The notes below the pieces were generated by a model. The model saw nothing but the letters and a program-made list of their open reading frames with translations. It was not told the origin of the DNA and did not search any database. A DNA stretch of 64,000 nucleotides from Ramazzottius varieornatus (taxonomy: Eukaryota; Animalia; Tardigrada), in contig BDGG01000009.1 of assembly GCA_001949185.1 (NCBI GenBank), forward strand, positions 1,839,874 through 1,903,873, given 5' to 3'. How positions within the stretch are numbered: position 1 is the stretch's first letter; the number at the start of each line of letters is the position of its first letter. Positions 1-63,843 of this stretch are shown piece by piece. The translations under genes and the position numbers were made by a program.

Positions 1-1416
1 AGGGTGGGGACATGTATGCTGTACTTTCTCGATACTCACAATCTTGGCTGACTGGTTGTTTCCCTCTGTTAGTAACATATGCAGCAAGTTGGACGTCATC
101 GCCGAACTGAAGAAGCACGAGCTGGACTTTGACGTTCGTGGTTTGAAAGTGGGGGACTTTCTGTGGATTGCCCGCGAGAAGAGCGAATATGCTGGGGGAA
201 GGAAGCCTCGAGAGCTGGTACTGGACTTCATAGCAGAAAGGAAGAGAGGCGATGACCTGGCTATCAGTATCAAAGATGGTCGATATACCTGTCAAAAGGT
301 AGTATGCAAAGCCAAAGTTTATAGCTGGCAAAGCCTGTATATTTTGGCCGTCGGCAAATGAAGTAAACCTGATGGTTTCCCATGTGGCGTGCTCTTGCAG
401 TCACTAAGAATGGAAAGCTGCGCCACTTGATATAAGGTGCGATCTTATTTGCCGACGTGTCAAATTCCTTGATGAGTCTAACGGATGATGGTTGGTGCAT
501 TCAAAAATAGTTCCGAATGAAGATGGCGGGTTTGCGTCGGCTGATCTACATCATTGAGGACAGCCAGCGCTTTCAGCATAAAGGCCTGAAGGATGGCGCT
601 TTCGATCAGGCTGTGACCAATCTGGCAGTGCAAGACGGCTTCATAGTCAAGGAAACGGACAGTTTACGGAAAACCGCCGAGTACTTGTTGTCGATGACCA
701 TGTTCCTACAACGTAGCTACACGGTACAAACTGCCTTGCCTTTACCGCAAACTTTGGCATCTCCTCTTTTGACTGCTTTTGTCCTTTTGCAGACCAAGAC
801 TTTGAGAAGCCTGGCCTTTGCCGAAAGATGGGCAAAAAGCCAAGAGGAGTTTAATGTCAATCTGCCTGTCCACGGTCTGCTTACTTATAGCGCTTTTTCC
901 GCCGTAGCCAAAACCAACCAGGTTCGACTGTAGCCCTCTTTCTCTCTTCGAGATGAATCGATACCTTGTCCGACGGATGTCTGTCCACCGTCTGTGTCAT
1001 TTCTTTCAGACCAAGAATGTCTCTCAAGCATTCCTCCTTCAGTTGCTGGCTCTCGATGGAGTGTCGCCGGCCAAGGCTTCCGCCATTGTAACCAAGTATC
1101 CCACCCTCAAAAGGTAAGGTTGTGGACGACCTAGTGGTCGATGGCCATGGTTAGAAGCCAGGTAGATGTGACGGAAACCCACTGTTTTAGATTATTGAAT
1201 GCCTACGACGCTCTGGCTACGGAAGACGAAAAGAAAATGATGCTTCGGGACATTAAGTTTGGAAGCGGCATAACGTCAGTCTCTTCCCTTTGACCATCAA
1301 TGCCTCGCAGATCACAACTGCGTTTTATGGTGCTTTTCTGCTATTGCAGGAGTATTGGTCCCGCAATCAGCAAGCGACTGTACAAACTTTACTGCACCAA
1401 TGGACCTCTTCGATGA
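1..1416 (+). CDS. MUS81: Crossover junction endonuclease MUS81, 3' part (spliced; 5' end outside window)
   Basis: ERCC4 nuclease motifs LKVGDFLW..ERKRGDDLAISIKDGRY..QK. C-terminal HhH (QLLALDGVSPAKA) and terminal SIGPAISKRLYKLYCTNGPLR*, stop TGA 1414-1416. GT-AG introns join ORF fragments 44-361 and 517-933. Confidence 0.93.
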
Positions 1417-1728
1417 ATGAAACGGCAAAGAATTTGACTAGTAATCTTTCACAATATCCTTTACATCATTTTTGATCTGCTCGATCCGCACACAAGCTAG
1501 GTTTTTCACTTTGTTGTGTGCCAGATACCTCTTTTACAGAAGTTTTAACGGAAACAGACAATGCCCATCCCAAGATGAAAGTCTTCCACACATAACCGTC
1601 GGTCCAGCAAAGTTTATCCATCAAGATCTTCCTTCAACTTTTCGAAGCTTTTTGACAAAGAAAGAAGAATAAAATCAGCGTCTGAAGCAACAAATGCACT
1701 GTACACTTTCATAGCAAGGAATACTTTT

Positions 1729-3002
1729 CTAGCTCCAGTCCATCTGTTTGTCCTGATCGGCCATCTGACCTGCCAGTTGGCCCACCACATTGTCTTCAGC
1801 GTCTTCCTCCGACACAGCCGCCCTTTCCGCCATGCTGTCTTCCATCAGCGCCGCTTTCTCACTACTGTCATGTACTTTGGAAGAAGCTCCAGCAGGCTGA
1901 GTATTGGACGCCTCCGCAGCTGGTCCGCTTTCTCGGGCGACCTGACTGAAGGCACCTTCGCCATTGTCTTCTGCGGCCATCCCCTCCTGTTCCGGTGCCG
2001 AGACTTCTTCGCCGTTCTCGCCTCTCATCTTTCTCAGCTTGAGGCGCAAATCAGTAGTCTTGTCAACGTCTTCGCCCTCTTGGGATTCCGAGTCGTTTCG
2101 TTCTTCCCACTTGCGCTTGCCGAAGGAGCGCCGTTGGTTGGTTCCTCCTGCCATGGCAAAGTCGCCTGCTTGGATTCTCTCCATACGGTTCTGGATCATC
2201 TTGCCGAAGCCTCCTCGCCCACCGTCGTAGTCTGTACGGAACTCGTCGCGTACTTGCCCACCAGACTTGCCCCGACCGTACTGTCGTCCTTCGATAAAGC
2301 CAGCGTCCCAGTCACAGCGGATGACACGCTCGTCTAGCCGTGTCCCGTTCACGTATCGAAGTGCATCTTCGGCATCTGCACGTCTGTAGTACCTGCAAGA
2401 CATTTCCATCATCTTACTTCAACCTTTAAACAATCTAATTGGGCCTAAGTTAGGCAACTCAACTTGACAAGAAGGCATTACCCAGATGCGCCTAAGTGGC
2501 GCATACTTCCAGCCAAAACACCAAGCTGGCGCGCCACTCGGGGAAACAATCAAACCTGTCAAGATCGTTATTCCAAGCGGCGCACACTACCATCCAATAA
2601 CAATGGTAACGTGCGCCACTTTCGAAAACACTCTTGCACAGTTTCCATTAGTCCTTTATAAGGACGTTCATAGTCTTCGTACTCAACAAAGCAAAATCCG
2701 CAAGGTGTTTTGGTGAAGCGATCCAGCCCGATGATACATCGTTTGACGTCTCCACTCTTAGAGAACAAGTGATGAATTTGATCCTCTGTCGTAAAGAAGG
2801 ACAGGTTACCGACGTAGAGAGTGGTACTGGCCCGTAGCTTGTCTTCTTGCTCCTTCATCGACCCCTAAGAGCGAGACGGACAGCATGTCAGCCAGCCTGA
2901 AGATCGGCCGTGTGTCATGTGCAAGCCTAGCGATCGTTCTATTACCTGGAACTGCTGGTCTCGATAAGCGCTGAGTGAGCCATTCCTCTTTGAAGCGGAC
3001 AT
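1729..3002 (-). CDS. NCBP2: Nuclear cap-binding protein subunit 2 (CBP20) with long acidic C-terminal tail (3 exons)
   Basis: [44 protein letters not shown] and [26 protein letters not shown] are diagnostic for CBP20. ATG at 3002. Confidence 0.96.
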
Positions 3003-6562: not shown

Positions 6563-9500
6563 TTACCGTTTTCGGGCGGCAGAAACATCGAGGAGGGCCA
6601 GCTTTGCCTGTCGCTCAAGCCTTGCGGCTTTTGCTCTGACCGTCAGTCGCTGCTGGGTACTTGGCAGGACTTGGACCTTGCGACTCTCCAGTGCCTTCTG
6701 CATGCCCTGGCACAGACTGTTCAGCAGTGACAGGCGGACAGAAAGCTGAAAAAGGCGCTCTTCCATGGTGATCAGCATCTGGCTGAGCTAGAGGAGGGAC
6801 CACAAAGTTGAAAACCTTGGCGCCGACGAAAAGCTTCGTCAGTCTTACTGCACTAACCATTCCTTCCCTGTGTTGAAGGTCCGTCATGTTAAGGGTTGGA
6901 GACGTCAGTTTCTGCAAAGTTTCCTTCTTGCACTGCACGACCTGCCTGGTCAAGGCAAGGCGACGTTCCACGGCTTTGACCAGCTAAAGGACAAGAGCGA
7001 TGCATGACATGTCGACCAATAACTTGAATAATGCAGCAGATATTTGTACCTGCTTCCCTAGTTCTTTCCTGGTCTTGACATAGGTGGTTAGCAGAGAATC
7101 GTGCCACTTCAGTCGCTTATAAAGCAGCTTGATGTCCGTGTCGGCACTTTTGTGTAGCCATTCAACGTAAGAATCGAGAGCTCGATGTCGCAGCTCGATT
7201 TCGTGGCTGGCTTTTACTGCGACGAAAGAACAATCATTTCCATATTTTGTCGTCACAATTCCTCTCAGTAGAGCTCTGTCAGAGGTTGGTTGGTTAATGA
7301 TGATGAACCTACCGACTTGATTCTGTTCCACATGCTTCAGCATGTATTGAGTGGTGATATCGATCAGCAGCGACGCTCCACAAGCTCGAAGTTCCGATAC
7401 CAGCTCGAATGTTTCCGTGAAAGTTTCGCATTTCAGTAAGTAAACATCCAAATCTTTGCGCAACCTATACACATACTCAAGTCGACATCGACATCAAAAC
7501 CTACTTGAAATTAGAATTTGGCCAGATTCAAGGCCTTACATCAGAACTCGCGCAAATCCTCGCTCGTATTCTTCTTCGAGGTCTTTCATCTTTTGGCGCT
7601 CTTCAAAATGAGCTTTGCGAAGGCGCGATAACGACGTCCATAAACTTGATTTGCCATGCTGCGCGTTCTCCAATTGCCTGGCAAAAACATTGAATAAAGT
7701 TACACTTTTCCCCCGCAAAGTCAATGCTGTGGGGGTTTACAGGGAGACAATGGGCGAAACGGACCTGACTTTATGCCGATACTCTTCCTTCTTGCGCTTG
7801 AGCTGGTCGTTGAGGCAAGTCGTCCGGTCCCTGTGCTCATGCATCCCACCCTGGCTGAAACTAAGTAGCTTGCGCAGCTCTTGTCGATGACGATCCAAAG
7901 CGTAGTATTCAGATTGCATCTCCTCGACTTTCCTGCTCTTCTCCAACAGCTCGGCCGCGGCGTACCGGTGGGCAGCCTCATTCTGTTGACATTCCTCTTG
8001 CAGCTGCCGCTCTTTCTGTCGGACCTTCCTACGCTCCAGGCTCTGAGAGCGCTGCTCGACATGCTGAAGTAACACAGCAAGGTTATCGCTACAAAGCCTA
8101 CAAATTGTCACAATCGGGACGTCAGCAGATGGACTCATCCGTATCCTTCTTATCAAGCGACGCACGCTTCATGCAATGATCGATAGAAGCCTCCGCCTCT
8201 TAGGAAGGCGATCTGGATAAAATCAGCTGCCAAAGTCCCAGATGGCTTTCTTTGGTATCATGGATTGAGCTGTAGATTTTGTGCCAAAGCTTACCATACG
8301 CTCGACTTTTCCTTCGAGCTTTCTATATGCTTCAGCTCCCTTCCTCAGGCGCATGAATATGGAGAACCTTTCTTTGAACTTCTGCCTTGCTTGGCGATAC
8401 AGTACCGTGTTCTTGTCCCGCCGTTGGCTGCCTCGCGAACCGTAGGTGTTAATGAGCTTTCCCAGGGTGATAATCTGTTGGCGATGCTGATCTGCTTCGT
8501 ACTCGTACTCGGTTGCCTAAAGAACATTATCAATTCTCTACCGATGGTTGGACGAATGGGGGAGGCAGGTAGACGAAGCGTACAAGACAGATCTCTGAGT
8601 GGCGCATTTTTCCGTGGTTAGTGGTTGAAAGCGCGCGCCACTTCAGGCTATGAACTTGTATGTTTGGCTTGCCCGCCTGTCATCTTTCTCTCTCGAGGGC
8701 TATATGGTCAAAGACCTACCTGTTCGAGCAGTTTCTCGGTAAAGTCTCGGTCGCTCCTGTTCTGCCCCGTCACACGGCGGGTCTCCAGGTCCAGGTTCCT
8801 CTTGAGCGCGCTTAGTCGATCCCGCTCCCGCAGATGGCTCACTCGCTGGCACGAAGCTGCCCGCACAAGGGCTTCGGCCTCGCCCAGCTTCTGTTGTAGC
8901 GACAGTCTGAAATACAAACCGACATTTGAGAGGAAACGTTGCCAGAGCGGACGACCTTACTTTTCCTCTTTAGTCTGAACTTCCGCCTCCAGCTCGCTCC
9001 TCATACTTTGAGCTAGGCTCTTGTAGCTTTCAAACAAGGTTGCGAGCTCGCCTTCAGCCCTTTCTCGGTTCTGCAGGACTAGGCGTATGTCTTTGTCAAG
9101 CTCGTCGTTGGCGGCGCAGTTTGCCTGCCAATGTTGCTGAAGACGAGTAATAATGGCAGCCAACGCTTGAGCTTCTTCCGCACTTTTCCTACCAAAGCAA
9201 GGAAAGAGAAACTATAGCTCTAAGGCTAGCAGTACTTACCACGGTAAAGAGCCTTTTGATTACCCGTTGTCGATTTCCAGCTGTGCACACTCCCTTTGGA
9301 TACGCGGTATGCGATTGCTGATGGATAGCAGTTCCTGCTCTTCTGCCCGTATGTCCACTTGCGCGTTCCTTATACGATCGTGGATTTTGAGCATCATGAC
9401 TTCGTTCTCCTGCATATGCTTGGAGGTGTTGTCGATTGTTGTTTGGTAGTGCTCGGCTTGCTGGGAAAGAACTTGTCCTTCCAAGATCCAGCAAGTGACC

Positions 9501-10441
9501 AGATGTCGCAGCTCTGGCTCTGTTGGGATCTTTTCCAGTGTAGAGCAGAGCTGGTTCTTGTCGACCTCCAATCTGCACAAGCCAACTGAAACATATATCT
9601 ATCTCAAAACCTGTGCGTGGCAATCTCCAATAAATAGATACTCGGCACATCCAGATACAGTAAGGGAGACTGGCAGACGAAATGTCCAACATCTGTCTCA
9701 AGTGGCGCATATTTCCCTTATTAATAGCCAGAGGAGTGCGCCACTGGAAACGACGATCCTGGACGTCTCCTTTGCCGCATTCCTGCAGGCACTCTTGGTG
9801 GCGACCTACTTGTCGATTTCTTTATTCAGTCGTAGCAGATGGAAGCGGGATTTCTCCAGCTCGTCATTGAGTCTTCTGGCATCTCCTCGAAGGCCTTGCA
9901 ACTGCTGTTTGAGCTTCCTGGGTAGGGCATCAGCTTCGGCGACTTCTTCGGCATGATCCAGGCAGTAGCGAATCTGATCGACAACGAGGTCGTGCAGAGT
10001 TCGCTGCTGCTGGAACTTCTGGCTATACCTCTGGATAACTGATGTTATTCTCCGCCGTAGGTCGCTGGCTTGGCCGTATGTGACCACCTTGTGTTCAAAG
10101 GCGCTATCAAGGGCACTGTTGATCGGAAAAGTATCCAGTCGAGCTTCGATGCGGTGGAGGTCCTTGGAGAAGGATGACCGGTCTTCGGCCAACTCGGCCA
10201 GAACGCCGTTTATCGAATCCGGCTTCCAGTTGGATTGGTAGAAAATATCCAAGGCTACGTTTTTGAAGGTTGCAGTTTTCGTTCCATAGCCCTCTGTGAA
10301 GATGGGATTCTCCTTTTCCGAGCGACTCGCGGGAACATAGCTTTGTAGTTCGTCCAGCGGATCATGATCAGAACCGATCCTGTCGTGTTGGTGACAGCCG
10401 GTGCGGTCGGCAGCAGGAACCGGCAACGATACATACTCCAT
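6563..10441 (-). CDS. Large multi-exon coiled-coil protein, possibly cilia/flagella-associated (CFAP58/CCDC146-like)
   Basis: Chain of minus-strand heptad-rich ORFs (9806-10450, 9260-9580, 8957-9163, 8708-8917, 7737-8165, 6984-7472, 6563-6778) separated by GT-AG introns. DIKLLYKRLKWHDSLL and LTSPTLN loosely resemble the CFAP58 C-terminus. The family call is weak and the 3' end is approximate. Confidence 0.6.
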
Positions 10442-12154: not shown

Positions 12155-15100
12155 ATGAGTGGGATCAGTAGCCCCTCGTCTTCTTCCGTAAACCAGCTGA
12201 GGTTCGATCTGAAACGTATGAGGGAAGACAAGGAGTTTTGGCAGGCGATGGCTAGTTCTCTGGAGCAAGATGTGCAGAACCTTAGTAAGTAAATAAATTA
12301 TCCACCAGCCTTTCGTTCGACGTATGGGAACTCGGCCAGAACGTTTCTCCAAGTGACGCATGCTCTCAGCCACTGTCACAGATATGTGCGCCACTTGGCA
12401 GATGATTGGCGGGCGTGGTATGTCAGCCGAGCTTCCAAATCTGACCGAAGGTAATTGGAAGACATTAACTATACCTAATTTGCTGCTTGATTTCAGCTAA
12501 AGATCTAGCCAAACTAGAAAAGCAGGACGATACACGAGACGCGGCTTTGGGTCGTCGTTTTGAGAGGGAAATTCTAGAATTGCGAGAAGCGAACGAGGGA
12601 CAGTCCCGTGAAATCCGTCGACTTCGGGGCGAACTCTCCGACCACACCAACGATGCCTTTCTTCTGGAAGAGAAAGAAAACGCCCACAGACGGTACGCGG
12701 ACCTGGAAAGCGAGTTAGCTGACAGTGAAGCTAGGCAGAAGAAGATGAAAGGAGAGAATGACGAGATGAAGCTGTTGATGCGCAACCTACAACGGGAAAG
12801 ACAAGATGGCCTGAACCATCTCAAGCGAGAGCTCGCTGAGCTGCGCGCTGCCGAGACTTCTTCTAAGCATACCATCGAGCTGTTACAGCGATCCGTTCGA
12901 GAGAGGATAGCCGAGGTCATCCAGACTGAGAACAGCAAGAATGAGGAAATTGCCAAACTCCTCAAGGACGTCGAAGAGAAGGAAGACATTATCAGGGCCA
13001 AGGAAGGACCGGAAATTCAACTAAGTATTCAAATGGCATGTCCGTCTCTGGTTATCTGTAGACGGAGGTCACATGTGTTTCTTGCAGGATTAGATTTCTC
13101 GAGACTGGAAGACGAGCACATGGCTCTCAGGCAACGACTTGAAGATCTTACTGCCAGTCTGCAAGTTGAAGAGGTAAAGTAATGCATTACTCGTATTATT
13201 TTCCTAGCTGTAAATGAAATGGTGGTAAGGTTCGATGAACGCAAACGAAAGAACGCACGTAAAAGGCAATGGATCTTGAACAGTCTTGAACGCTATTAGA
13301 AATTTCATACTTGTACGTGATGTTCGAGTACAAAATTGTTTGCCGAGAACAGAGAAAACTCTGTTCTCGGCAAACAAGCTCGACAATTGTGGTATCAAGT
13401 GGCGCACCCTTGCACTGTTATTGGCCGGGAGCGTGCGCGACTTGGAACGCGATCTTTTGAAGTTCGTTTGGCTATGTCCAAGTTTAGATGAGATTCTTTC
13501 GACCTTCCAGGTTGTCAGGCTGTCATCACAAACCGCAGTAGTCGGGCTTAGTTTTCTGCTTTCGTTTTAGGACGAACGAGCCAGGCTTGAGAGTGAAGTG
13601 GTTCGTCTTGAAACAGAAGCAGAGCAGAACGAGAAGGCTCGACAGACTTTACAGCAGTCCCTTGACGCGCAAAGCAAAGCGGCTCTCTCCACTTACGAAG
13701 AGCTAACCCAAATATCTGCCCAATGTCAGAAGAAAAGGGAAGAACTAGAGAGCACCGTGCTCGAGATTGCCGACTTGAAGGTGAGCAAAGGTTTCATTCA
13801 AGAAAAGACATACGGCACGTCGGCAAATGAATTGACCCAGATCATTTTTCCAAGCGGCGCATACTGTCAGCCAACAACAATGAAAGCGTGTGCCACTTGG
13901 AATAACGGTCTGGGTGAAATCGTTACCGGCGTTCCATGCTGAGTTTCAGATTTCCGGCTTTGCTATTCTCACTCATTCTTGTTAAAGGACAAAGTTGTAG
14001 CGTTTGAGGGAGAAGTCGTGCGGCTACAGGCTGAAATAAAGCAAAGCCTGGAAGCTCACCACAACTTGACAAAGTCTCACGAAGAACAAAGTGAGCTGCT
14101 GGCTAAGGTGCACGTGGAACTGGCCAAGCTGGTGTCGGTGTGCCAGCAGAACGAACAAGAGATGGCGGCTGCAGAAGCCAGCATCGAAGAGTTGAAAGGC
14201 GACAAGCAGCGCATGCAGGAGACGTACGAGAAGACAGTGCAGGCCATACAGTTGGAACACAGCTGCATGAAGGCCGCGCTGGCCCGGCGGGATGCCGAGA
14301 GGCTTCAGCGGGATGACCAGTTGAAGGAGCTGGAAAAGGCGCTGGACATGCTGAAGATGGAGAAGAATGCCGAGAAGGAGTTGAAGGAGAACGCCCTGTT
14401 GCGAGTCGAGGCTCAAGAGGAAGAGATAGCTGCGCTGAAACGCGAGCTGCTCTTGACGCACAACAGCCAAGATAGTACCGTCGGCCAACAAGGAGCAACT
14501 TGCCGACTGTCCAAGTGGTCGTCGCAACCAAGCGGTAAGTCCTCCTTCTTTTCTTCCGTTGTCTCAAACTGCTCTAACTGAAGTGTGTCTTCTTCAATAG
14601 AATTTGGCAGTACGGTCTTGCCTCAGTACGCCAGCCAGACGGAACTGGCATCTCCCAGCAGTCGATCCGAGAGTTCCTTTCGGGGGTAATGTCTCATGCA
14701 GTTAGTCTTTCAACCATCACCTAAGGAAATGGTGAGGCCGGCAACGAAAGATACAACAACGTTAATTCAAGTGGCGCAGGTCTCCATGGTCTCCATTAGT
14801 AGCTGGAAGAGAGTACTACTTCAGACAAAAAGCAAGATGGTCATTTGAAGTTGCGCTTTCTTTCAGTCAATAACAATGAAAACGTGCGCCACTTGTGATG
14901 GTCTGATACGATTCGTTTGCCGACCTGCCACGGTGTTGACGGTATACAGTGATTGTTTTTCGGTTCTCTTTACGCCGGCTTTCGTCGTCTAGGTCTAGGT
15001 CGCAGTTCTCACGTCTTTCCACTCTACACATCCCTAATCTGGACGAGGCCGACGTCATGGCAAGTGGCTCCATTCCCACCCGAAGTCTCGAGACCCAGTC

Positions 15101-15980
15101 TTCCCCCACCCCCAGAGCTCCAGCAGTTTCCAACTTTGAGCGAACGCGCACTGTTCGCTACAAATTCTTTCAGGATAGCCGTGAGATTTTGCCCAGTTTT
15201 TACTAACACTTGTTGGTCTAACAAAAGCTGAGCATCCCAATATATCCTTCCATCTGGATAGTTTGTCTTTTGTTGTAGAATTCCGCTATAACCAGGACAC
15301 GCCTACCCGTGCTCGAGAGCTTGCTAATCGCAACGCTCAACTTCCTCCCCACATGAAGTCAAGTTATCCCACGGAAATGACCACTTCCAACTGGCGCCAT
15401 TCCACTTCCAGCAACCAGCCAAAGGTAAAGTACATACGCAAGTTAACGAATCATCTGTATAGAAGGCTGTGAATGCTTATGTCAGATATCCTACACTAGA
15501 ATATGGCTAAATTGCATTTGCAGTTCGCCGAAGCAGTTCTGCAGGATCGTTTTCCAAGTGGCGCACTCTGTTGGCGGGAAGCAATGGGAATGTGCGCCAC
15601 TTGCTGAAAGCATACAACCTCGAGTTTTTTTTCCGAGGTCCTAGTCCATGGGTTTATTTACAGGTGGTACCCGAGACTCCGCCGAAGACTCCACCATCTT
15701 CCGGTACGGAGCTGATTAAGAAGACTTCTGCAGTGAAAGGCATTTTCCGTCGTTCCATCCACAAAAAGCGTCGCAAGGATGGTGAGAAAGGCCTAGCTAG
15801 TACTTCGAATGAGGGCTCGCCTGCACCGCGCCATGGTCCGCTGGTAAGTCTACCTTGGCGAATCGAGTAGTAGAAGAATAGACAAATGTGGAAACTGAAC
15901 TTCTGTTGCAGAAAGGCAAGCATAAACCAGCCGAAAGTTTTGAGATTTTGAATTCGCCCAAGAAGAAGAAGAAAATTTGA
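12155..15980 (+). CDS. NuMA/Mud-like coiled-coil spindle protein (spliced)
   Basis: Long coiled coil, then RARELANRNAQLPPHMKSSYPTE (compare NuMA RIAELQQRNRVCPPHLKTCYPLE) and terminal ESFEILNSPKKKKKI* (compare NuMA AFSILNTPKK). First clear ATG at 12155 (MSGISSPSSSS); upstream exons are possible. Confidence 0.75.
15556..15602. repeat. Intronic palindrome copy (NuMA-like gene), perfect 10-bp arms and 27-nt spacer
   Basis: AAGTGGCGCA ctctgttggcgggaagcaatgggaatg TGCGCCACTT. Confidence 0.9.
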
Positions 15981-50466: not shown

Positions 50467-53400
50467 ATGCCCGTCTACATGAACAAGCCAGAGTTCGCTT
50501 TGAAAAGAGCTGAAGGTCAGTCTCACTCATCAGCCATATGTTGCCAACATGAAGATTGACAAGTGAGCCCTTCATTGTTTCGTTTAGAATTCCTGGATGT
50601 CGGTAAGAAGTCGCGCGCTCTGGAGGCGCTGACCGAAGCCATCAAGAATAGGAAGCACCGAATATGGCAAAAGTCTCACGAGGATATTATGCGCAAGTTC
50701 ATCCACCTCTGTGTCGAACTGAAGCAGTCGCAAACCGCCAAAGAAGGTCTGCATCAGTACAAGAATCTGACTGCCAATGTCAATCCCAAGTCCCTGGAGG
50801 ATATCGTTCGATACTACTTGAAGCTAAGCGAGACAAAGTGCGACGAAGCTCGAGAGAAGGCCAACGTTCAAGCCGCGGCAGCTCCCAGTACGAATGTTGT
50901 CGACGTGGACGATTTGGACCTGGCCGAATCACCTGAAGGGTATGTGGACGAAACTTTGCCTGCTGCTCTGATCTGCCTAACCAGTGTGTACCGTTTGTTT
51001 CAGCATGCTGCTGAAAGTGGTGAGTACAGATACGTCTCAGGATCGAGCTGACCGAGTGGTGCTGCTTCCGTGGGTACGCTTCAACTGGGAAGCCTATCGT
51101 CACTGTCTGGACCTGCTGCGAAACTTGTCCAAGTTGGAAAGTTTGTACCACGATATCGCTTCACAAGCCTTCAAGTTCTGCTTGAAGTATGGCCGAAAGA
51201 CTGAGCTTCGCAAGCTTTGTGAAATGGTAAGACCATCATGCACATGTCGACTTCGTCTTATACACTCGTCTATGAGACTGTCAAAATCCGCCGCAAATTA
51301 CAAAATTATTATTATCACCCTTGTCCGCTTCCAGTTTTATGGTTGTACAGTAACAAGTTTTCCTCAAGGACTGTTGTATCACCTGTATGGTTTCGTGAAC
51401 GAGGCTTCGGTAGGTTGTTGGATATGATTGTTGTCTGTTGATAGTTGCGCAACCATATTGGACAAATTTCCAAGCGAGAAGTAGTGACACCCAATGCAAT
51501 CAACCTCAACAATCCGGAAACCCAAGAACTAAACCTGCGTACCAGATTGGTCCAACTGGACCATGCTATCGCAATGGAAATGTGGCAGGTGACTGGAGCC
51601 TTCGTATGCCTTGCCGGGACAGGTGGCACGTCGCTTACCGTGTTTTGATCAGTTGCTTCTTTCCTAGGAAGCTTTTCGAGCCATCGAGGATGTTCACGGA
51701 TTGATGTCGATGCTGAAGAAAGTACCGAAAGCTGCTCTGAAAGCCAACTACTTTGAGAAGTTGGCTCTGGTCTTCTTGCGTGCCGGTAACGCTGTCTTCC
51801 ACGCAGCAGCCCAACAGCAACTCTTCATCCTGTACCGTGGCTTCCGCAAGGAACAGAACCCGGAAGAACTGCGACGGTATGCTAATTCTCTCAAGGCGCG
51901 AAACAACTTGGCTCGGTCAATGGCACTGAACTGGGACCCCAGCGAACAAGGTCGAGGAGATCCTTGTCCAGGTGGCGCACGCTGGTAGCCTTTATGGATT
52001 ATAAGCATGCGCCACTGGAGCAAACGACCTTGCGGAGCTGCTTTGCTAAGCTGGCAAATGTGATTAGGACAGTAGATAGGCCATGATAGTTACAGGGCGG
52101 AGTTTTGCTAACGCGCCTTGCTGATTTTCCAGACTGGCCGTCTCTGTTCTGTTCGCTACGTTGGCTGTCCCTCTTCAGCCACCTCGAACGCAGCTGGAAT
52201 CATTGCTGGAGTACGACGACACGGCTGCATCCAAGATGAAGCAGCTGACTCTTTTGGTTGGATACAGCCAACCGCCCACGCGAAGCAAACTGGTGGAAGA
52301 TTTGGTAAGAGAGGCAGGCTCACTTTACATGACGAAGGCCAGCTGATGTGTCTTGTTCTTGTGGCAGCAAAAGCATGGGATCCTGCAGTATGTTCGACCA
52401 GAACTGCAGGCTTTGTACCAGCACCTCGAAGTCTCCTTCGATCCCCTGCATATGGGGCCCGTCATTGCCGACATCCTGACACTGGTCAACAACACGGACG
52501 AACTGGCTTCTGTTCGACATTATATCAGTGTCATTGAGCAGGTAGCCGTCGGAAAACATCTACGGCAGGTTAGTAAGAGGACAATAATGCAACTGAGTAG
52601 GAGATATGGAACTACAGTCCACGCGCTCGAAATGTGTACTACAGACGGTTGCCATTTCCAAACACCAATACCAATCATATTTGATCACCTTTCTCGTCAT
52701 GCCCACACAGCCTAATATCTGCGGCTAGATTACTGTGTAATGCATGTATCATGTAATTTTGGCCTGTAGCTTGGCATGCTGCCTGGTGAAGATTTAGCAG
52801 GCCCCAAATACTGGGTCAACATCAACTGGAACCGAAAACTTTTGTAATAGACATTTCGAGGGAGTGGACTGTGTTTCAGCTTCCTGATGCAGCTAGCCGG
52901 TACAGTAGGAAGTTTATGATTTCAGTTGTCGCAAGTATACGATTCGGTGGAGATTGATCGCGTCATCCAGATGATGCCCTACACCAACTGGCATACCATC
53001 GAACGAGTGGCCATCGAGACGGCGCGAAACACAGACTTGGAGGTAGGAGATGAGCTGCCTTGTGAATGGTCTAGATATGCTGCCTGCCATGATTTGTTGA
53101 TAGGTGCGCATTGACCATCGACGACCGGGACTGTTCAAGTTCGGCAGCGAAGTCTCCCTCGCACCGTACGAGACAGCGGCTGCAGGAACTTCGGAGGCTG
53201 GCCAGTCGCAAATTCCTGCTGACCGAGTCCGAAGTCAGTTGGTCATGCTGCTGACTGGTTTGACACGTGTCAGTCGCGAAGTCAAGGAGCAGCAAGACCA
53301 GGTATATCTTCCCATTTCACCACGTATTATTTCTCGCTGTGCTTGTTTCGCTTTGAGACATTTCTGAGCTAGCTGCACACAACGACCGTACACTGTACTC

Positions 53401-55959
53401 TACGTACCCTTTACGCGGGTATGCAGGTACATGACGAGGTGTTGGTCCCTTACCTGCATACTGTCGCAATTTGCTGTATCTGGACGGTTTGTTGTTGTTG
53501 CACGTAGGCGACGCCTTGAATGTGTGCTGCTTGTCATCGCTTGACACTGTGTACTGGGTCATATGTTCAACTTGCTGGTTTCAGGTCGACGAGAAGGAGC
53601 TGCGCAAGCACTTGTTCGACCTTTACCGGAAGAATGCCATGCGTGATCTTCTGAGTAACTTGACTCGCCCCCACAAGTCCGATTCGCGACAGAAAAGTCT
53701 GGAAGACCGCGAGCGGGAACGCGAACAGCAAGCTAAGGCTGCCAAGAAAAACAAGGACAAAGAGTCGGCTGCCGCTGAAGCGCAACGTATGCAGCGAGAC
53801 ACCAAACAGTTCGAAGAACAACGCAACAAACTGCGAGAAAAGGAGCTGGAGAAGCAAGTCATCAAGGAGAAGATCGAAAAGATGAAACAGACCGAGTTTG
53901 GCATGCGCGTTCTGAAAGAACTGGAGGTCAGTGACAGGTCTAGGTGATGTTTAGGTCAAATAAGAAGGGAAAGTAAAGGTAGAAAGCCGCCTAGAAAGCT
54001 CGGCCTGATCCTTGTCGCAGATGACGCAGGCTTCCAGCCGGTATCGTTGAGAGCATGCGCCACTTGGTAAAAGAATCTTGTCAAGTTGCTTTACCTTTGA
54101 GGCAGCTGCAAGTGCAGCTCATTGAGACGTTTGTGCGCTGCTCTTCGTACAGTTGATCCCATGCCGCCCTTATACGTGCCGTAGAATGAAGTGCTGGATT
54201 TTTTAGGACTGGGAAAATGTGGACGTGAAAGAGCTGGATCGGCTGGAACAGCGTCATCGAGAAGAGATGCGCCGCGAAGAGGAAGAGAATAATCAGCGAC
54301 TGAAGATTCAGGAGAAGAAGATCGATCATATCGTTCGGGCCAAGCATCTTGAGGAAGTGGAACTGCGACGACAGGATAACGAGGCCATGATTCAGAGCTT
54401 TTACGACATCTTCAACCGCGACGAAGACCGCAGAGTAAGTTATCCATATCGACGAGTTGGGCCGTTGGCAAATGAGTTGACGCTAGGCGGAGTGGCAGAC
54501 ACTTCCATTGTTGGTGACGGAAAAGTGCGCCACTTCGGAGGACTGAGGTCATTTGCCGACGTCGCCTTTCTGCCTTGGCTTTGGAAGGGGTTGGCGCATG
54601 TGTTGGGACTTGTGTCATTACAGATTCAACTGCTGAAGGATGATCGCGAGTTCTTGCTGAAGAAGCGCGACAAGATGATGGGCATGAAAGAAGACTACCA
54701 CAAGTTCATGCAAGAGCTGCAACAGCGCAAGCAGCAGTCCTACACGGAGAAAAAGGCGGCATGGGATCAACTGTACGAAGAGCAGCGCACCAAACGTCTC
54801 AATGATCGTCGCAAGAAGCGGGAAGAAGATCGCCGTGAGGCTTTCGAACGGCAACAGCAAGAAGAAGCGGAACAACGCCAAATGGAGGAAGCTCGAATTC
54901 GTACGTACCGCTCAATATCTGTATCTCTCTCTGGTCAAATATGGTTGGAAATTTAGGGCTTGAAGAGGAGACTGCTCGGAAGAGAGCCGAACAGGAAGCT
55001 CATCAGCGAAAGCTGGACGAGATGGCGCGCAAGCAGCAGGAGCGAATTCGAGAGATTGAGGAACGAGAGGAACGAGAACGCCAGGAACGAAGCACCCACC
55101 TCAACACAGCTCAACCGTATGTTACTGACCAGAACTTGCTTCTGCATGACAATTCAGTTGGTCTTGAAATAATCCTGCTAGGCGATTGGGACGTCGGCAA
55201 ATGATTTGGCCCAGATCGTTGTCTCAAGTGGCAAACGTCCGCAAACGTTGTCTCAAGTGGCGGACGTTTGGTTTGTTACTGGCTGAGAGCGTGCGCTACT
55301 TGGAAAAGCGACCTGGGTGAAATCGTTCTGGTCTAAAGACGTGGGTTGCGAGGAGGCATTATCCTGACTGTCTCTGTCTTTACAGTACTCAACGTGAACG
55401 TGAGGCCGAGCGTGAAGAGCGTCGTCAGACGGCTGTAGCTCCACCGCCTCCTACTCCGGGCAAGTACATCCCGCCTAGCCAACGTGGTGGAGGTGTGGCT
55501 GCAGCCGCTTCTGCGCCTTCCGCAGCGCTAAGTCAGCCGCGTGAACCGATGGTCATTACGCTCAATCGAGCAAGTGGGGAAAATGTCCTCGCTCCCTCAG
55601 GTTTGTGCTGGCGCTTTTCTTTCCCCTGTGGCTTGATGGATGAACATACGTCTTTGTCTTTTCAGTTGTCAATCTGGGCAATGTCAACGACCTTCGTAGA
55701 GATCGGGAGCAGGGTGAGTTTGTCCTCTTCTGTACGCCGATGATAAATGTTGGCTGCCCTTTTTGACAGCTTGGCCTTTCTAGGTCATGGACATCGACCC
55801 TCGGACGGACAGAGAGATCGTGACTTTGGCCAGCGTGGAATGGACGGTGGACCCGCAGGTAGCTTCGGTCGTCCGCGTGACACACGAGGAGACATGAACC
55901 GCGGACCAGACATCAGGAAACCGGCTGGTGGAGAAGCCGTGCCCGACAAGTGGCGCTAA
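50467..55959 (+). CDS. EIF3A: Eukaryotic translation initiation factor 3 subunit A
   Basis: [67 protein letters not shown]; PCI domain and a charged coiled-coil C-terminus. Confidence 0.97.
52615..52871. mobile_element. Intronic Tc1/mariner-like MITE in EIF3A
   Basis: TA|CAGTCCACGCGCTCGAAATGTGTACTACA ... TGTAATAGACATTTCGAGGGAGTGGACTG|TG: ~29-bp imperfect TIR with CAGT termini. Confidence 0.7.
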
Positions 55960-56280: not shown

Positions 56281-58393
56281 CTACCTCACGACTGATACAG
56301 GGTGTGTCACGGGATTGAGCTCTTCGAGCTCTTCCGGGTTCTTTTTCGAACCATTCTCAAGTGCTATATTATCTACAGGAGACTTCGTTTTGAGCTTGAC
56401 GGATATCCACTGGTCCGGCATAACCATGAAGATGAAGGCTAGTGCTACGATAGCCACACCGGCAATCTGCAAGTCACTCAGACTAATTTGCCGCACTATC
56501 GCATCGATACCTGAAATTACACAAGACAAATGCAAAAGTGATGACAGATGCTACGATGAAAAGCCCGGAAATATGAGGGCATGGCAAACCAACTCCATAT
56601 TGTTTTCTCTAGTGACGCACTGTTTCAGTGACTTTGGCTGGAAGCGTGCGCCATCTGGGAAACGGTCTGGTCGAGCTTGTTTATCTGGCTCGCATATGCC
56701 AAAGATATCTTTGAAGGCTCGACTTACCGGTGCTTAGAGCGACAATGGCAACTTCTGCCACCGACATGAAGAACGGATTAGATAAGGCCAGTCCATATGC
56801 GTAAGAGACTGAGCTTACTGCAAAATGAGAAGAAAACATAAATAACAAGGTGATTTTGCGTACAATGTTCTTTTGTGCAGAAATGGACTAAAGGCTGTGT
56901 ACGTACTAAAGGCAAAACACCAGGAAATAAACATTATGCCCCAAGGCATCTTCGCGAACTCCCATCTCTCGTAGCCAACGGCGTTAATTATCAGCGGGAC
57001 AGGAAGGTACATAATGCAGATGAAGATGGACATGATGGACATGATCAGTGAGACTTGAATGAAGTCAGCCTGCTTGAACGCCTGCTTGAAAGTCAGCTGG
57101 TGGAGGGAGTAGAAGATGGCTGCTCCCAGACCACAGAACACACCCAGGTACACATTGGCCCCGGCGAAGCTCGTCGTCGAGAATGCCAGGGGAAGCTCCG
57201 TCGCGTTCACGACGGTTTCGTGTGATACGAAAGCTTCTCCGATTGGATCGGCTTGCGTGTCCGTAGACTTCTCCGCGGCGTACTTTGCTGTCGTGGAGGC
57301 GTATGAGATCAAACCAATGCCAACGAAGGCAACAATGACAAAAATCCCCTGAAGAAGAAAAAAAGCCCGAATGTCAGCCGGAGGCGAAGGGTTTCGTCTG
57401 AAATGGGACGTGGGCAATGAATTGAACCTGATGGTTTCCTAAGTGGCGCACACCGTCAGCTAATAATACTGACAGCGTGCGCGACTTGAGATAGCGATGT
57501 TGTGGTCGCGCACTGTTCCGGCTAGCAAAAATGGAAACGTGCGCCACTTGGGACAACGATCTTGTTCCTTTCGTCTGCCAACCTCCCAATTGTGGAAGTA
57601 CCTACCTTAATTAACAACATCTTATTCTTCAGGACCAGCCATGAAAGAAGGTAGGAGAAAGCGATAGTGCCAGCGCACAAGGCGGTAACGATGGAAGCCG
57701 GCGCATGGACCAAGCCGACGATCCAGCCTATCTGCATGAGCAACATAGTGATAGACATGGGGAAGAACTTCCACAGGATGATGCGCACTCCCACGCGACC
57801 TTGGCCCTCATCGACCCGCAGAGCCTTGGTGCAGTGTCTGTAAATAACACAGCAAACAGATCGAGGTACTGATCGAATTACCGTATAACAAATGGAATTA
57901 CCGCCACTGATCTCTCACAGCCACGGGATGACGCTGACATAGGCGAATGAGAGACTGTATGAGGAGCGCGAAAGGGAAGGCCAGCATGCGCATGGCGATC
58001 TTACACCAGATAAAGAGAAAAGGCGCTTTGTAGGGTTTGTACTGGACATCGTTGAAGGCCGAACTGGTCAGCTGAGAGGAAGTGACGACCAGCGTTATGT
58101 AGACGAGAAGCAGAAGTAAGGCTAGCAGCCAGTTCTTGTGAGCTTGTGCGGCGGAGATGGCGCCTTCGCCTTCCGGTGGCGCGGCCGGCACCACATTCAC
58201 CTTGTCTTCCTCCTCTGCAAGGTTAGTCTACATTTTACAGCATCGATTTTCAACCAGGGAAGATTACACGGATTTTTAACTCACCGTCGGACAAATCAGT
58301 GGCGATTTGGTCCAGATGGGTTGCCGAGCTCGGTGTTATTAAAATTTTGGGGAGAGCCGGCTGCTTGAGGAATTTGGCCGATTCTTCCTTCAT
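56281..58393 (-). CDS. SLC35F3/F4-like EamA/DMT-superfamily membrane transporter, paralog 2
   Basis: NWLLALLL..SSQL..YKAPFLF..K, QIGWIVGL, GLALSNPFFMSVAEV. Exon layout similar to 16524-18352. Confidence 0.78.
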
Positions 58394-58780: not shown

Positions 58781-58959
58781 TTGAGTGATTGCGGAAACCC
58801 GTCAGGAACGAGACGTCAGGATCAGGAAGTTTATTCAAAAAAACGACAATATTGGCAAGTGATTCATTTGATTCTGTGCCAATGTTGTTGTTTTCTGGAA
58901 TGAACTTCCTGATCCTGATCTTAACGCCTCGTCCCTGACAGGTTTCCGCAATCCCTCAA
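58781..58959. repeat. Foldback/hairpin MITE-like element
   Basis: ~80-bp arms (TTGAG.GATTGCGGAAACC.GTCAGG.ACGAG..TCAGGATCAGGAAGTT.ATTC..) around a short loop. Confidence 0.8.
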
Positions 58960-58996
58960 TTGTGAATACGACAGACGTCATTATTCATTAGGGTGT

Positions 58997-60484: not shown

Positions 60485-61094
60485 TGGCAGACTGCGATAC
60501 TTACGGCATGCTTATGACATGGTTGTAGCCTGAGGGCTTGTGGGGTCTGTTTGTCGGATACTACAGTCTACAGCGTTGGCGCGGCAGGACACTTCATCGT
60601 AAAGCTAGCTGGTTGGTGATCTCAAGGTTGCTACCGTTTAGCCTGCCCATGTCGACCTTCTGAATTTCACGAAGGAGCTCGACGAGAAGATGTGCTTGCT
60701 GTCAGTCCACCGGATCACTGTCGACCAGGCATATCGGGGATAAAAATCGCTCTGACGCGAAAGACAAGGAGCATCCATCTAGATCGATCGACGCGAACTG
60801 GCTTCCTCCTCACGACGATCGTCTTCCCATATGTCCGTCTTGACTTGGCTGTATTTTGCTGTAGCACCAAAGGTATATTAATCCATGCCGGCCTGCTATA
60901 TCGCCAAACGCATATACTTATGTCGCGTATATTTATCGCATACTGATTGCATACTCATTGACGTCTGACTAGTAATCTATCTTCTCCAGGAACACATCAC
61001 ATGTACACTACATAAGAACGCCTATCCCATCTTTGTTCTCTGAGGAGAACCCGGAATATCGTCCTCCGAGTTACTGATAACACACTGGGCCAAG

Positions 61095-63843
61095 ATGACG
61101 AGGGGCAAGGTGTACTGCCGGTCGTTTACGTGGACAGTGTGTGTTTGTGTCGCTCTACTGACATCCAAGGTACGAAGAAGGTTCCAAGCAGAGTATAATA
61201 TTTACGGATAATACGTGATGTAATTGCTTTGGGGTTGTCATTTCACAGGCGTGTGGTGATGCTGCTATACTGAACATCAGCTACATAACCGAAAGCCAGA
61301 ATGCCGGCAGCAGACAGTATGTCTCCTATTGTGCAGCCTTCAATCCGGAATTGTCGTCATTGCCCGCAGCCACGACTAGGACAGCGGTTAATTATCTTAC
61401 ATAACATTCTCACATGTGTTTGGATACTCTCTACACCTGCCTACGTAAGCTTGCCTACTTGTTTACGTAAGCTTTCTTTGTAGGAGTGGAAGAAGCTTGA
61501 ATGGGATGGTGACAAAGATCTGTGCGATGATTACGGTCGAGAGTCCCGCCTCACACCGGGCGCGGTTCTTGCAGTCTCACGTCGAAACTGCAGTGCCTAC
61601 GATCAAGGCATGCAGGCTGAGAAAATGCAGGCTTCTGGCCTCATCATTGCCAGCCACAAAATGGTAAGCTGTTCGAGCATGATATCACGCGTGGCCAATT
61701 CTTGGCAGCTACCCGATATCACATAAGCTTGAATGGGAGCTCGGCAAAGGAAACTCGACAAGATTGTTTGCCCGAGTGGCGCACGCTTCTAGCCAAAATA
61801 ACTGAAAAGGGTGCGCCACCTTTTCAGAAGACGATTTTGTTTGCTTGCAATCATTGCCGAGCTCGGATTGACTGCCCGGAAGGGATTCTTACGAATGCGG
61901 GAGAAAATTCGCTCTGATGAAAGATGCATCTCTTTTGTAGTTCTTCCCCGGACAGCCTAACATAACATGGAAACATCCTTCCACTTTCCCCATACTGATA
62001 TTGAAGATGACAGACATGGCTCGCATCGAAGAACTACCCTTCAGAGAAAGCTGGTTGATATCGATGCAGGCACTGGTGGACACGTACGTTGTCGATGGAA
62101 GTGGCATCATTCTGATCCTGATGGCTGTGATCGTGATAGCGGTCGGCTCGTACCGATCTGGGCAACACCAGTAAGTACATAAGAAGGGCCAATGTTATAC
62201 TCCCAAGTGCTGTTTGGGCTGTTGCAGGTACTCGACCATACGCAACACCCATTTCGGCTTTGTGAATGCGGTGGAAGGCGGAAATGTCGTCAGTCCCTCC
62301 AACAAACCGGTTGAAGGAGCACAGGGCGCATCAGTCCACTTTGGTCCCGGCGCCGCCATTGTCTTCGCCATCTTCATGACCGGACTGCTTGTGTGTAATT
62401 CCTGGATTACTTCCCTCTGACCACACTCCTCAAAGTTTTCTGTTACAGGTACTGATGTATTTCTTCTATGATTTTCTCGGTAAGTCGTCCCTTATAGAAT
62501 CAGCACGTCGATTAAACAGTTTGGCATAAAATTCCTGATAACTCCTTACTTCCAGTGTACCTCTTCATTGCGCTGTTCGCCATTGGAGCCACTTCCGGCA
62601 TGTTCGAATGTTTCCGACCGATCCTGCAGTGGACTGAAGCCGGCCTGTGCCGGTAAGCTAATCTCCTCTGTTTCGTCAGGCTTTGTTGGTTTCATAAACC
62701 AGTATCTGTAAAAACTGGGAGCCCGACAAACGAAATGACTGTACGGGTACACTGTTGGCCTCTAAAGTGGCGCACTATCTCGTTGTCGCTGGCTGGAAAG
62801 GCGCGCCACTTTGACCGTTTGTTGGTGGCTTTTCAGTTATGTAACTCTTCCCTGTGACACTTGCAGAATTCCTCTTGGCACGGGGTTCGTCGGAAACTGT
62901 TGTGGAGGTTACTTGGATATACGTGCAGTACTCCTCTTGTTGATCAGCGCCGGTCTGTCTGTCTTTTGGGTCATTTCCCGCAACCAACCCTACGGTTGGA
63001 TTCTACTGGATATCCTCGGTAGCTTCCTGCTGATTAGCGTCCTTATTGGCATTTTGTTACCTAGTCTGAAAGCATGTACCATATTTCTGTGCTTGCTCTT
63101 CATCTACGACGTGTTTTTCGTCTTCATCACACCGTTCTTCACGAAGGATGGGCAAAGTGTTATGATCCAGGTCGCCACTGGTGGTTACGACCCCACACGG
63201 GATTCCGGTGGTGGTCAGAGGGAAGTCATCCCTGCCGCCTTCAAGATACCCCACATTCCTACCGGTGCGCTGTGTGAGAACCTGTTTGAGGATGCCAGTT
63301 ACTCCTTACTGGGCTTTGGTGATGTGATGGTTCCCGGCTTCCTCATCTCTTTTCTGCGTGGCTTCGAGCTCGTCTTGGGCATTCGCCCGGTCTATTCTGT
63401 CTCCGCATGCATAGGTAAGGTCTCATTCCGGATAATGCTTCCGTGTTCGCACCTTCCCAAGTTTTATTTCTGTCCTTTCCTCCTAGCATACTTCGTCAGT
63501 CTGATCGCTACTACCGCTGCCCTCATCTTTATGCGCACCGGTCAACCCGCCCTCTTGTATATTGTACCCATCCTTTTACTGACGATATACTTCATCGCCT
63601 GGAGAAGAAGAGAAATGTCTTTATTGTGGAGAGGAAATCTGGTATGTGTTGTGAAGACTTTGAAAACACACCTTCCGGAGTCTGACGTTTGACTGGTGCT
63701 GTTTTTAGACACAACTGTATGTGGAGCGTCAAAGAAGCTACGGGTCGGAAGTTCTATCCGACACAGAGAATGCGCCGCCAGCTTCACTTCCGGTAGCTAT
63801 CGTACCAAGCAGCACAACAAATAGTGACGCAGAAGTAATTTGA
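61095..63843 (+). CDS. SPPL2: Signal peptide peptidase-like 2 (PA domain plus GxGD aspartyl protease)
   Basis: Signal peptide, PA-domain VSRRNCSAYDQG, IYDVFFVFITP, LGFGDVMVPG, QPALLY; stop 63841-63843. Confidence 0.92.
61736..61864. repeat. Near full-length intronic palindrome copy showing the outer arms (SPPL2)
   Basis: GGGAGCTCGGCAA..AAACTCGACAAGATTGTTTGCCCGAGTGGCGCA-N28-TGCGCCACC..TTGCCGAGCTC. Confidence 0.85.

What the first reader, a model, noticed from the sequence alone, without database searches (positions are those of the whole stretch)
382..62811. An intron-restricted palindromic element (TGGCGCA-N27-TGCGCCA) present in every gene of the window
Seen: about 36 copies of a ~120-130-bp imperfect palindrome, roughly GGGA(G/C)(C/G)TCGGCAAA..CAGATCGTTTTCCCAAGTGGCGCA-N27-TGCGCCACTTGGGAAAACGATCTG..TTTGCCGA. 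Every copy I found is inside an intron. All 16 cellular genes carry at least one, including tiny ones (SDHD, NCBP2, TXNDC15, PHYHD1). I saw none in the intergenic stretches or the 5-kb MULE, although other MITEs cluster there. Most introns over about 150 nt contain it, while the rest are mostly 50-80 nt. Inference: this may be a MITE-derived element co-opted as a genome-wide gene-body mark, such as a chromatin, self-licensing, condensin/centromere-type recruitment or splicing signal. The alternative is a transposon with a strong preference for transcribed DNA.
Basis: partly seen in the sequence, partly recalled or inferred. Interest (0 to 1): 0.9.

Follow-up and report, generated by a model that had tools for sequence, protein, structure and literature searches.

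The report
Old palindromic jumping element filling introns
This tardigrade genome holds roughly 18,000 decayed copies of a 120-base palindromic mobile element that sit almost only inside existing introns; it looks like an old, dead transposon family and not a signal the animal uses to mark its genes.

Summary
A profile search finds 36 hits, which make 32 insertion sites, of a ~120-bp foldback element. All 32 lie inside GT..AG introns: 5 shown by RNA contigs, 4 read by hand, the rest from a self-trained gene model. None lies in the intergenic stretches, which do hold other, younger inverted-repeat elements.

Genome-wide (55.8 Mb, the assembly size published for Ramazzottius varieornatus) the exact core pair occurs 3,715 times against 2 for a reversed control. 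That implies about 18,000 copies, or about 2 Mb.

It is not an introner. The element sits 16-270 nt from either splice site, inside introns that were already there.

It is not a universal gene mark. In an unbiased 200-kb sample, 10 of 22 predicted intron-containing genes have no copy, and random insertion by intron length predicts 9.2. Orientation relative to the gene is random. The two arms decay independently, with no compensatory changes.

Introns are still favoured over other non-coding DNA: 32/32 here and at least 24/35 in the sample, against 36-39% expected.

The inner core and the termini are conserved about three times better than the rest, and this is not a detection artefact. I read them as transposition signals; host selection is not excluded.

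128 other first-reader notes of this scan describe the same family on other DNA.

The parts
350..458 (.). element copy, near-complete
   Evidence: nhmmer 64 bits; only a best-intron model, + strand 149-510, close to the window edge
2548..2644 (.). element copy, ends truncated
   Evidence: nhmmer 68 bits; predicted - strand intron 2376-2809
8120..8237 (.). element copy, full length
   Evidence: nhmmer 62 bits; best-intron model on the - strand, 8089-8294
8562..8673 (.). element copy
   Evidence: nhmmer 55 bits; predicted - strand intron 8517-8719
9666..9778 (.). element copy with exact core pair
   Evidence: predicted - strand intron 9573-9809
12328..12433 (.). element copy in an RNA-verified intron, 12285-12496
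   Evidence: spliced out in RNA contigs; nhmmer 51 bits
13366..13477 (.). element copy in an RNA-verified intron, 13174-13570
13817..13931 (.). element copy in an RNA-verified intron, 13781-13987
   Evidence: 84 bits
14734..14926 (.). two adjacent copies (14734-14827 and 14831-14926) in an RNA-verified intron, 14686-14992
15522..15639 (.). element copy with exact core pair in an RNA-verified intron, 15425-15663
17708..17819 (.). element copy in a + strand intron, 17643-17853
   Evidence: read by hand; the end of the next exon at 17943 is marked by an RNA contig loose end
18906..19014 (.). element copy in an ANAPC5 intron (- strand, 18861-19137)
20325..20523 (.). two adjacent copies in an ANAPC5 intron (- strand, 20232-20589)
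23599..23685 (.). element copy, left end truncated; predicted + strand intron 23579-23747
24144..24233 (.). element copy with exact core pair; the intron starts with GTGAGT at 24116
25459..25534 (.). half copy (model positions 2-74); predicted + strand intron 25430-25625
27847..27960 (.). element copy in an intron of the mitochondrial-type RNA polymerase gene (+ strand, 27685-28022), next to a second, unrelated young MITE at 27699-27823
29503..29615 (.). element copy with exact core pair, in an intron of the HpcH/citrate-lyase-like gene (- strand, 29422-29634)
38846..38962 (.). element copy in a predicted + strand intron (38815-39020 or 38579-39084)
41037..41141 (.). element copy with exact core pair; predicted - strand intron 41005-41187
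   Evidence: read by hand; 84 bits
43928..44044 (.). element copy; predicted - strand intron 43864-44066
46283..46394 (.). element copy with exact core pair; predicted - strand intron 46228-46429
48024..48142 (.). element copy; predicted - strand intron 47986-48170
51935..52052 (.). element copy with exact core pair in an eIF3a intron (+ strand, 51877-52132)
53986..54095 (.). element copy in an eIF3a intron (53927-54206)
54464..54561 (.). element copy with a decayed left core in an eIF3a intron (54435-54623)
55190..55327 (.). partial copy plus an adjacent copy in an eIF3a intron (55117-55385)
56583..56691 (.). element copy; predicted - strand intron 56511-56727
57412..57585 (.). two adjacent or nested copies; predicted - strand intron 57349-57605
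61737..61863 (.). element copy with exact core pair in a + strand intron, 61664-61940
   Evidence: read by hand
62719..62813 (.). copy with the right arm truncated; predicted + strand intron 62653-62947

Best explanation
This is an old, now inactive, very high-copy foldback MITE: a non-autonomous DNA transposon made of two ~55-bp inverted arms and a ~10-nt centre.

Shown:
- The genome holds about 18,000 decayed copies.
- The copies lie inside introns that already existed, at variable distances from the splice sites.
- They take either orientation.
- Per-gene counts are as expected from random hits on intron DNA.

Inferred:
- The element inserted preferentially into transcribed gene bodies.
- Insertions in exons, or within about 16-24 nt of splice signals, were removed by selection.
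- Insertions in the middle of an intron were harmless. The transcript of the element still folds into a long hairpin, so the element loops out and the intron stays short in effect.
- The well-kept blocks are the termini (GGCAAA/TTTGCC) and the inner core (AAGTGGCGCA/TGCGCCACTT, about 38-47 nt from each end). I read them as the sites the transposase needed. On this reading they were kept by selection among transposing lineages and not by the host.
For: Repeat family and copy number:
- 36 hits in the window.
- 3,715 exact core pairs in the genome against 2 for the reversed control.
- 14 of 67 sampled loci match the exact pattern, which implies about 18,000 copies. The model search gave 35,823 first-look candidates on both strands.

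Age:
- The best copy scores 95 bits. No copy seen is a perfect palindrome.
- Within-copy arm complementarity is 0.59 against 0.58 between copies.

Transposon-like subfamilies:
- 47 column pairs exceed the 99.9% shuffle limit where 1.3 are expected.
- These include mirrored pairs 19/101, 20/100 and 23/97, which change together on both arms.

Pre-existing introns:
- The distance from the 5' splice site to the element is 19-273 nt, and from the element to the 3' splice site 24-172 nt. It never falls below 16 nt and 24 nt.
- Flanking sequences are not alike between copies.

Random hits on introns:
- 10 of 22 genes have no copy against 9.2 expected.
- Orientation is 14 against 20.

Intron bias:
- By the gene model, 28 of 32 window loci fall in introns against a 0.36 share (p=2e-9). 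In the sample it is 24 of 35 against 0.39 (p=4e-4).
- After hand correction all 32 window loci are intronic.
- Of the 11 remaining sample copies, six loci lie 330-700 nt beyond a predicted start codon.

Against simple loss from intergenic DNA:
- No half copies or weak relics were found anywhere: 33 weak hits against 31 in the null, and no core 10-mer outside known copies.

Hairpin in RNA:
- Mean -41 kcal/mol and z of -3.8, against -0.3 for control non-coding DNA.

The core is not a detection artefact:
- A search with the outer arms alone found 42 copies, all already known, with core identity of 88%.
Against: - No autonomous partner and no clear target-site duplication were found. There is only a weak 3-bp A/T-rich signal (z=3.7 among 648 tests).
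- Insertion preference is inferred from where old copies now lie. No new insertions were observed.
- Intron calls outside 12-18 kb rest on my own self-trained gene model. It merges neighbouring genes and missed 4 of the 32 true window introns.
- With 112 copies sampled, subfamily structure explains only part of the arm divergence. Leave-one-out identity rises from 0.72 to 0.77, against 0.90 in the core. Host selection on the core is therefore not excluded.
- Density differs fourfold between the two regions sampled, 2.0 against 0.46 copies per kb of intron. This is unexplained.
Confidence: 0.6

Rival explanations
1. Differential retention. The element once inserted everywhere. The genome then shrank by large deletions, which are tolerated between genes but not inside short introns, so only intronic copies survive. 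Intergenic DNA was later refilled by younger elements.
For: - The family is old.
- Other inverted-repeat elements with 87-96% arm complementarity, so younger, occupy the intergenic stretches. This family, at about 59-72%, does not.
- Yoshida et al. 2017 suggest that this species' genome may have been reduced in size (PMC5531438).
Against: - There is no excess of truncated or half copies, or of weak relics, in intergenic DNA.
- Copies labelled intergenic in the sample score the same as intronic ones, about 51 against 52 bits (my tally).
- The depletion would need to be tenfold or more while many intronic copies stay full length.
Confidence: 0.2
2. Host-selected cis-element. The paired core (AAGTGGCGCA, then 27 nt, then TGCGCCACTT), spread by the MITE, is kept by the animal as a protein-binding or RNA signal in gene bodies, for chromatin marking, licensing or splicing help.
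For: - The core is 87-97% identical to the consensus, while most other positions are 40-80%.
- This is not an ascertainment effect.
- The spacer length is mostly fixed at 27 nt.
- Subfamily structure in the 112 sampled copies does not fully explain the difference.
Against: - Ten of 22 predicted genes lack the element, as chance predicts.
- There is no orientation bias.
- Core pairing within a copy is no better than between copies, 76-87% against 74-87%, so pairing is not maintained.
- RNAalifold finds no compensatory pair.
- The termini are conserved as well (79-91%), which fits transposition signals.
- The core is equally well kept in copies outside predicted introns (my tally).
Confidence: 0.08
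3. Introner. Each insertion created a new spliceosomal intron in a former exon.
For: The element is seen only in introns, in many unrelated genes. Other first-reader notes suggest introner-like elements of other families in this genome (unchecked).
Against: - The splice sites lie 16-270 nt away from the element ends, at variable distances, in sequence that is not alike between copies.
- The element ends (TTGGGAG...CTCCCAA) carry no splice signals.
- Introns minus the element are still 82-280 nt, as long as ordinary introns or longer.
- Two copies can share one intron.
Confidence: 0.03

Closest known systems
MITEs with genic or intronic preference (plant Tourist and Stowaway families; a plant MITE review, PMC5172404, lists 'genic preference' as a family trait; from my own memory, gene-associated mosquito MITEs and zebrafish Angel)
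   Same: Small, non-coding, with terminal inverted repeats, very high copy number, subfamilies, and found in or near genes.
   Different: Here the arms cover almost the whole element (foldback form). In this window the confinement to introns is complete, not a mere enrichment near genes. The target-site duplication is unclear and no autonomous partner was identified.
Introner elements
   Same: A transposon family seen only in introns of many unrelated genes, in either orientation.
   Different: Introners are the intron, with splice sites supplied by the element and its target duplication. This element sits in the middle of introns that were already there and carries no splice sites.
Foldback elements (Drosophila FB, Galileo; root-knot nematode Tm1, PMC3169594, title seen but not read)
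   Same: Long inverted arms with a small centre, hairpin-forming.
   Different: Those are kilobase-sized and often have repeated subunits in the arms. This one is 120 bp with two short conserved blocks per arm.
PATC intronic signal of C. elegans (periodic A/T clusters that protect germline genes from silencing; recalled from memory)
   Same: An abundant non-coding feature of introns, proposed as a gene-level licence.
   Different: PATCs are a compositional periodicity enriched in a class of genes. This is a discrete transposon whose per-gene counts fit chance.

Membership tests
MITE (non-autonomous class II element) | Short (under ~800 bp) and without coding capacity | tested here: met
   Consensus of 118-125 bp
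MITE (non-autonomous class II element) | Terminal inverted repeats | tested here: met
   52 of 58 mirrored consensus positions are complementary. The termini read TTGGGAGCTCGGCAAAC...GTTTGCCGAGCTCCCAA.
MITE (non-autonomous class II element) | High copy number with subfamilies | tested here: met
   3,715 exact core pairs against 2 in the control, which implies about 18,000 copies. Linked column pairs define subfamilies.
MITE (non-autonomous class II element) | Target-site duplication of fixed length | tested here: inconclusive
   The best signal is a 3-bp A/T-rich duplication, 0.45 match against 0.30 in the null, z=3.7 among 648 offset and length combinations.
MITE (non-autonomous class II element) | An autonomous element with the same ends | tested here: inconclusive
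   No isolated arms in the 330 kb held. The 129 DDE_Tnp_4 loci in the genome could not be fetched.
PIF/Harbinger-derived (Tourist-like) MITE | 3-bp TWA duplication and a Harbinger transposase present in the genome | tested here: inconclusive
   The transposase domain is present 129 times, many with open frames of up to 471 aa. The duplication signal is weak and reads A-W-T, not TWA. No link between the two was shown.
Introner | The intron boundaries coincide with the element ends or its target duplication | tested here: not met
   The element lies 19-273 nt from the 5' splice site and 24-172 nt from the 3' splice site.
Introner | Element-bearing introns are absent at the same position in relatives | not testable with these tools
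Structured RNA element kept by selection | Compensatory changes that keep the pairs | tested here: not met
   RNAalifold keeps only 6 core pairs and none has a change on both sides. Within-copy pairing equals between-copy pairing. No Rfam family matched.
   Sample: 10 of 22 genes without a copy against 9.2 expected. Window: 0 of 12 against 2.6 expected, which reflects the local density.

The most novel reading that the evidence does not exclude
The two inner core motifs, at their fixed 27-nt spacing, are kept by the animal itself in thousands of introns as a binding site for a DNA- or RNA-binding protein. In that case a dead transposon would have seeded a genome-wide intronic cis-element. From memory, the core resembles the insect CTCF consensus in 11 of 12 positions; this was not tested.
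Probability: 0.08. Interest if true: 0.85.

Novelty: new member of a known kind. Interest (0 to 1): 0.42.

Why it matters
If the copy-number estimate is right, one family makes up about 2 Mb, or 3.5% of the genome. That is about a sixth of all intron DNA in this compact genome, which has 12.4 Mb of introns (PMC5531438).

The family would then account for much of the long-intron class. In this window 27 of the 42 predicted introns of 150 nt or more carry it. In the other region sampled the share is about 1 in 5.

Anyone who annotates genes or small RNAs, or who compares intron sizes between tardigrades, should mask it.

Complete confinement to introns without intron creation is an unusually clean case. 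It could be used to ask whether a DNA transposon can target transcribed gene bodies.

I found no paper on this family in four full-text searches.

Tried and rejected
- Codon-usage and 4th-order Markov coding scores alone were too weak to call small exons. A simple two-flank intron test missed true introns, such as 27847 and 42803. It was replaced by a self-trained exon-chaining gene model, which still merges neighbouring genes.
The Harbinger loci and the tandem array at the start of contig C1 could therefore not be read.
- The metagenome scan for the core pair gave 104 contigs. Most have a 25-nt spacer, many from one gut-bacterial locus, and match the full profile at 19 bits at most, so they are unrelated. 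I took none of them for human DNA, and none was used further.
- Rfam and Tandem Repeats Finder found nothing.
- Pfam on five ORFs of the supposed MULE gave nothing.
- Pfam names of sample genes with and without copies showed no split between housekeeping and tissue-specific genes.
- The joined (spliced) coding sequence of the 12037-16211 gene was built only inside a script, to find its frame. Exons were searched one by one, by reference.


Full report
**Source.** The window is C9:1839874-1903873 of a 55,842,812-base assembly in 200 contigs. Earlier notes of this scan call the animal a tardigrade. The size equals the 55.83 Mb given for Ramazzottius varieornatus by Yoshida et al. 2017 (PMC5531438). 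That paper's Table 2 gives 35.0% exon, 22.2% intron (12.38 Mb) and 42.8% intergenic.

**Observation.** The exact motif pair occurs 8 times against 0 expected. An iterated nhmmer profile finds 36 hits, which make 32 loci; four of them are adjacent or nested doublets. The consensus is a near-perfect palindrome of about 120 bp:
- ends TTGGGAGCTCGGCAAAC;
- an inner core AAGTGGCGCA about 38-47 nt from each end;
- a centre of about 10 nt.

**Intron location, RNA evidence.** RNA-derived contigs of public runs laid on 12001-18000 show one + strand mRNA (12037-16211, with a poly-A tail) and nine GT..AG introns.
- The five long introns (207-397 nt) hold all six hits of that gene.
- The four short ones (63-98 nt) hold none.

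**Intron location, other evidence.**
- Four copies that my first classifier could not place were read by hand. Each lies in a GT..AG intron between coding exons. One is in the mitochondrial-type RNA polymerase gene (PF00940, 4e-30).
- A self-trained exon-chaining gene model predicts exon, intron and intergenic shares of 34/27/39%, close to the published 35/22/43%. It recovers 8 of the 10 RNA-verified exons of the 12-16 kb gene.
- That model places 28 of the 32 loci in introns, where 36% is expected from the non-coding base share (p=2e-9).
- With the RNA-verified and hand-read cases, all 32 loci are intronic.
- No copy lies in the intergenic stretches. These do hold other inverted-repeat elements with 87-96% arm identity.

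**Not an introner.** The element lies 19-273 nt from the 5' splice site and 24-172 nt from the 3' splice site. It is never nearer than 16 nt and 24 nt. The intron sequence between the splice sites and the element is not alike between copies. Introns minus the element are as long as ordinary introns or longer. The introns were therefore there first.

**Genome-wide numbers.**
- The exact core pair occurs 3,715 times, against 2 for the reversed control.
- In the 264 kb I could inspect, 14 of 67 loci match that exact pattern. This implies about 18,000 copies, or about 2 Mb.
- The covariance-model search gave 35,823 first-look candidates on the two strands, which agrees.
- The best copy scores 95 bits, and none of the best copies is a perfect palindrome. 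I saw no sign of recent activity.

**Unbiased sample.** I took C1:3.0-3.2 Mb, chosen without looking at hits. It holds 36 hits, which make 35 loci, a third of the window's density.
- 24 of the 35 loci lie in predicted introns, against 39% expected (p=4e-4).
- Of the other 11, six loci lie 330-700 nt beyond a predicted start codon. There, missed first exons or 5'-UTR introns are likely. I cannot say whether any copy is truly intergenic.
- 10 of 22 predicted intron-containing genes have no copy, including a 34-exon gene with a VWD domain. Poisson insertion by intron length predicts 9.2.
- In the window, 0 of 12 models lack a copy where 2.6 are expected. So 'every gene' reflects a local density of 2.0 copies per kb of intron, against 0.46 in the sample.

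**Tests of a function for the host.**
- Orientation relative to the gene strand, read from the asymmetric centre, is 14 against 20.
- The two arms of a copy are no more complementary to each other than to arms of other copies: 0.70 against 0.705 by pairwise alignment, and 0.59 against 0.58 in profile coordinates.
- RNAalifold keeps only six core pairs and finds no compensatory change. The hairpin is not being maintained.
- It has not yet decayed away, however. Full-length copies fold as RNA at a mean of -41 kcal/mol with z of -3.8, against -0.3 for control non-coding DNA. This may be why a 120-nt insertion is tolerated in an organism with very short introns (inference).

**The conserved core.**
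- Identity to the consensus is 80-97% in the core and 79-91% in the terminal GGCAAA/TTTGCCGA blocks. At most other positions it is 40-80%.
- A search with the outer arms alone, which cannot see the core, found 42 copies, against 3 pairs in the reversed null. All 42 were already known, and their cores are 88% intact. The conservation is therefore not a detection artefact.
- Columns are linked: 47 pairs exceed the 99.9% shuffle limit against 1.3 expected. These include mirrored pairs that change on both arms together. Palindromic subfamilies therefore existed while the element was active.
- My reading: the arms diverged among transposing lineages, while the termini and core were needed for transposition. 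On that reading, the 10-12% core divergence is what has built up since insertion.
- With only 112 copies, clustering raises arm identity only from 0.72 to 0.77. Host selection on the core remains possible, and I give it 8%.
- The core is equally well kept in copies inside and outside predicted introns (my tally).

**Why introns.** Two explanations remain.
- Preferential insertion into transcribed gene bodies, followed by loss of exon-damaging and splice-damaging insertions. This is my preferred reading.
- Preferential survival in introns while intergenic DNA turned over.
- Neither intergenic nor intronic DNA shows an excess of half copies or weak relics: 33 weak hits against 31 in the null, and no core 10-mer outside known copies. 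That speaks against gradual loss but does not settle it.

**Classification.**
- The features of a foldback MITE are met, except for a clear target-site duplication and an autonomous partner. The duplication signal is only a weak 3-bp A/T-rich one.
- The genome has 129 matches to the PIF/Harbinger transposase domain, many with open frames. I could not read their ends.

**Prior knowledge.** Four full-text searches found no paper on this family or on introners or MITEs in tardigrades. Yoshida et al. report only bulk repeat content. Within this scan, 128 first-reader notes on other windows describe the same intronic palindrome. Those are unchecked notes and not independent evidence.

**Limits.**
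- Only one 6-kb stretch could be checked with RNA.

Noticed in passing
G000:C1:1481-1685 (outside the window): Three exact core pairs sit at a strict 82-bp spacing at the very start of contig C1. This looks like a tandem array built from part of the element at a contig end.
   Followed up: no
window 27699-27823: A different, younger MITE-like inverted repeat (28-nt arms, 96% complementary) lies in the same RNA-polymerase intron as copy 27847.
   Followed up: partly
window 58781-59853, 31551-31748, 10711-11524, 4758-4883: Other inverted-repeat elements, most with 85-96% arm identity, cluster in the intergenic stretches where the focal family is absent.
   Followed up: no
window 54130-54171 and 54752-54793: A 42-nt inverted repeat, 95% complementary, lies within the eIF3a gene. 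One arm is in an intron and the other in the next coding exon.
   Followed up: no
window 13778-13999: The element-bearing intron is spliced to acceptor 13985 in two runs and to 13999 in a third. The 13-nt difference would shift the reading frame, so this is an alternative or aberrant acceptor.
   Followed up: no
window 13386/15550, 17788/15548, 15566/14878: Low-depth RNA contigs jump from one element copy to another. These are probably assembly joins through the repeat. They show that unspliced element sequence is present in the RNA runs.
   Followed up: no
whole genome G000: There are 129 matches to the PIF/Harbinger transposase domain DDE_Tnp_4. Several have equal scores and 427-aa open frames, which suggests a recently active Harbinger family.
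   Followed up: no
L021:800-960: One copy is flanked by a further 15-18 nt of perfect inverted repeat beyond its ends. It is either nested in another palindrome or a longer variant.
   Followed up: no
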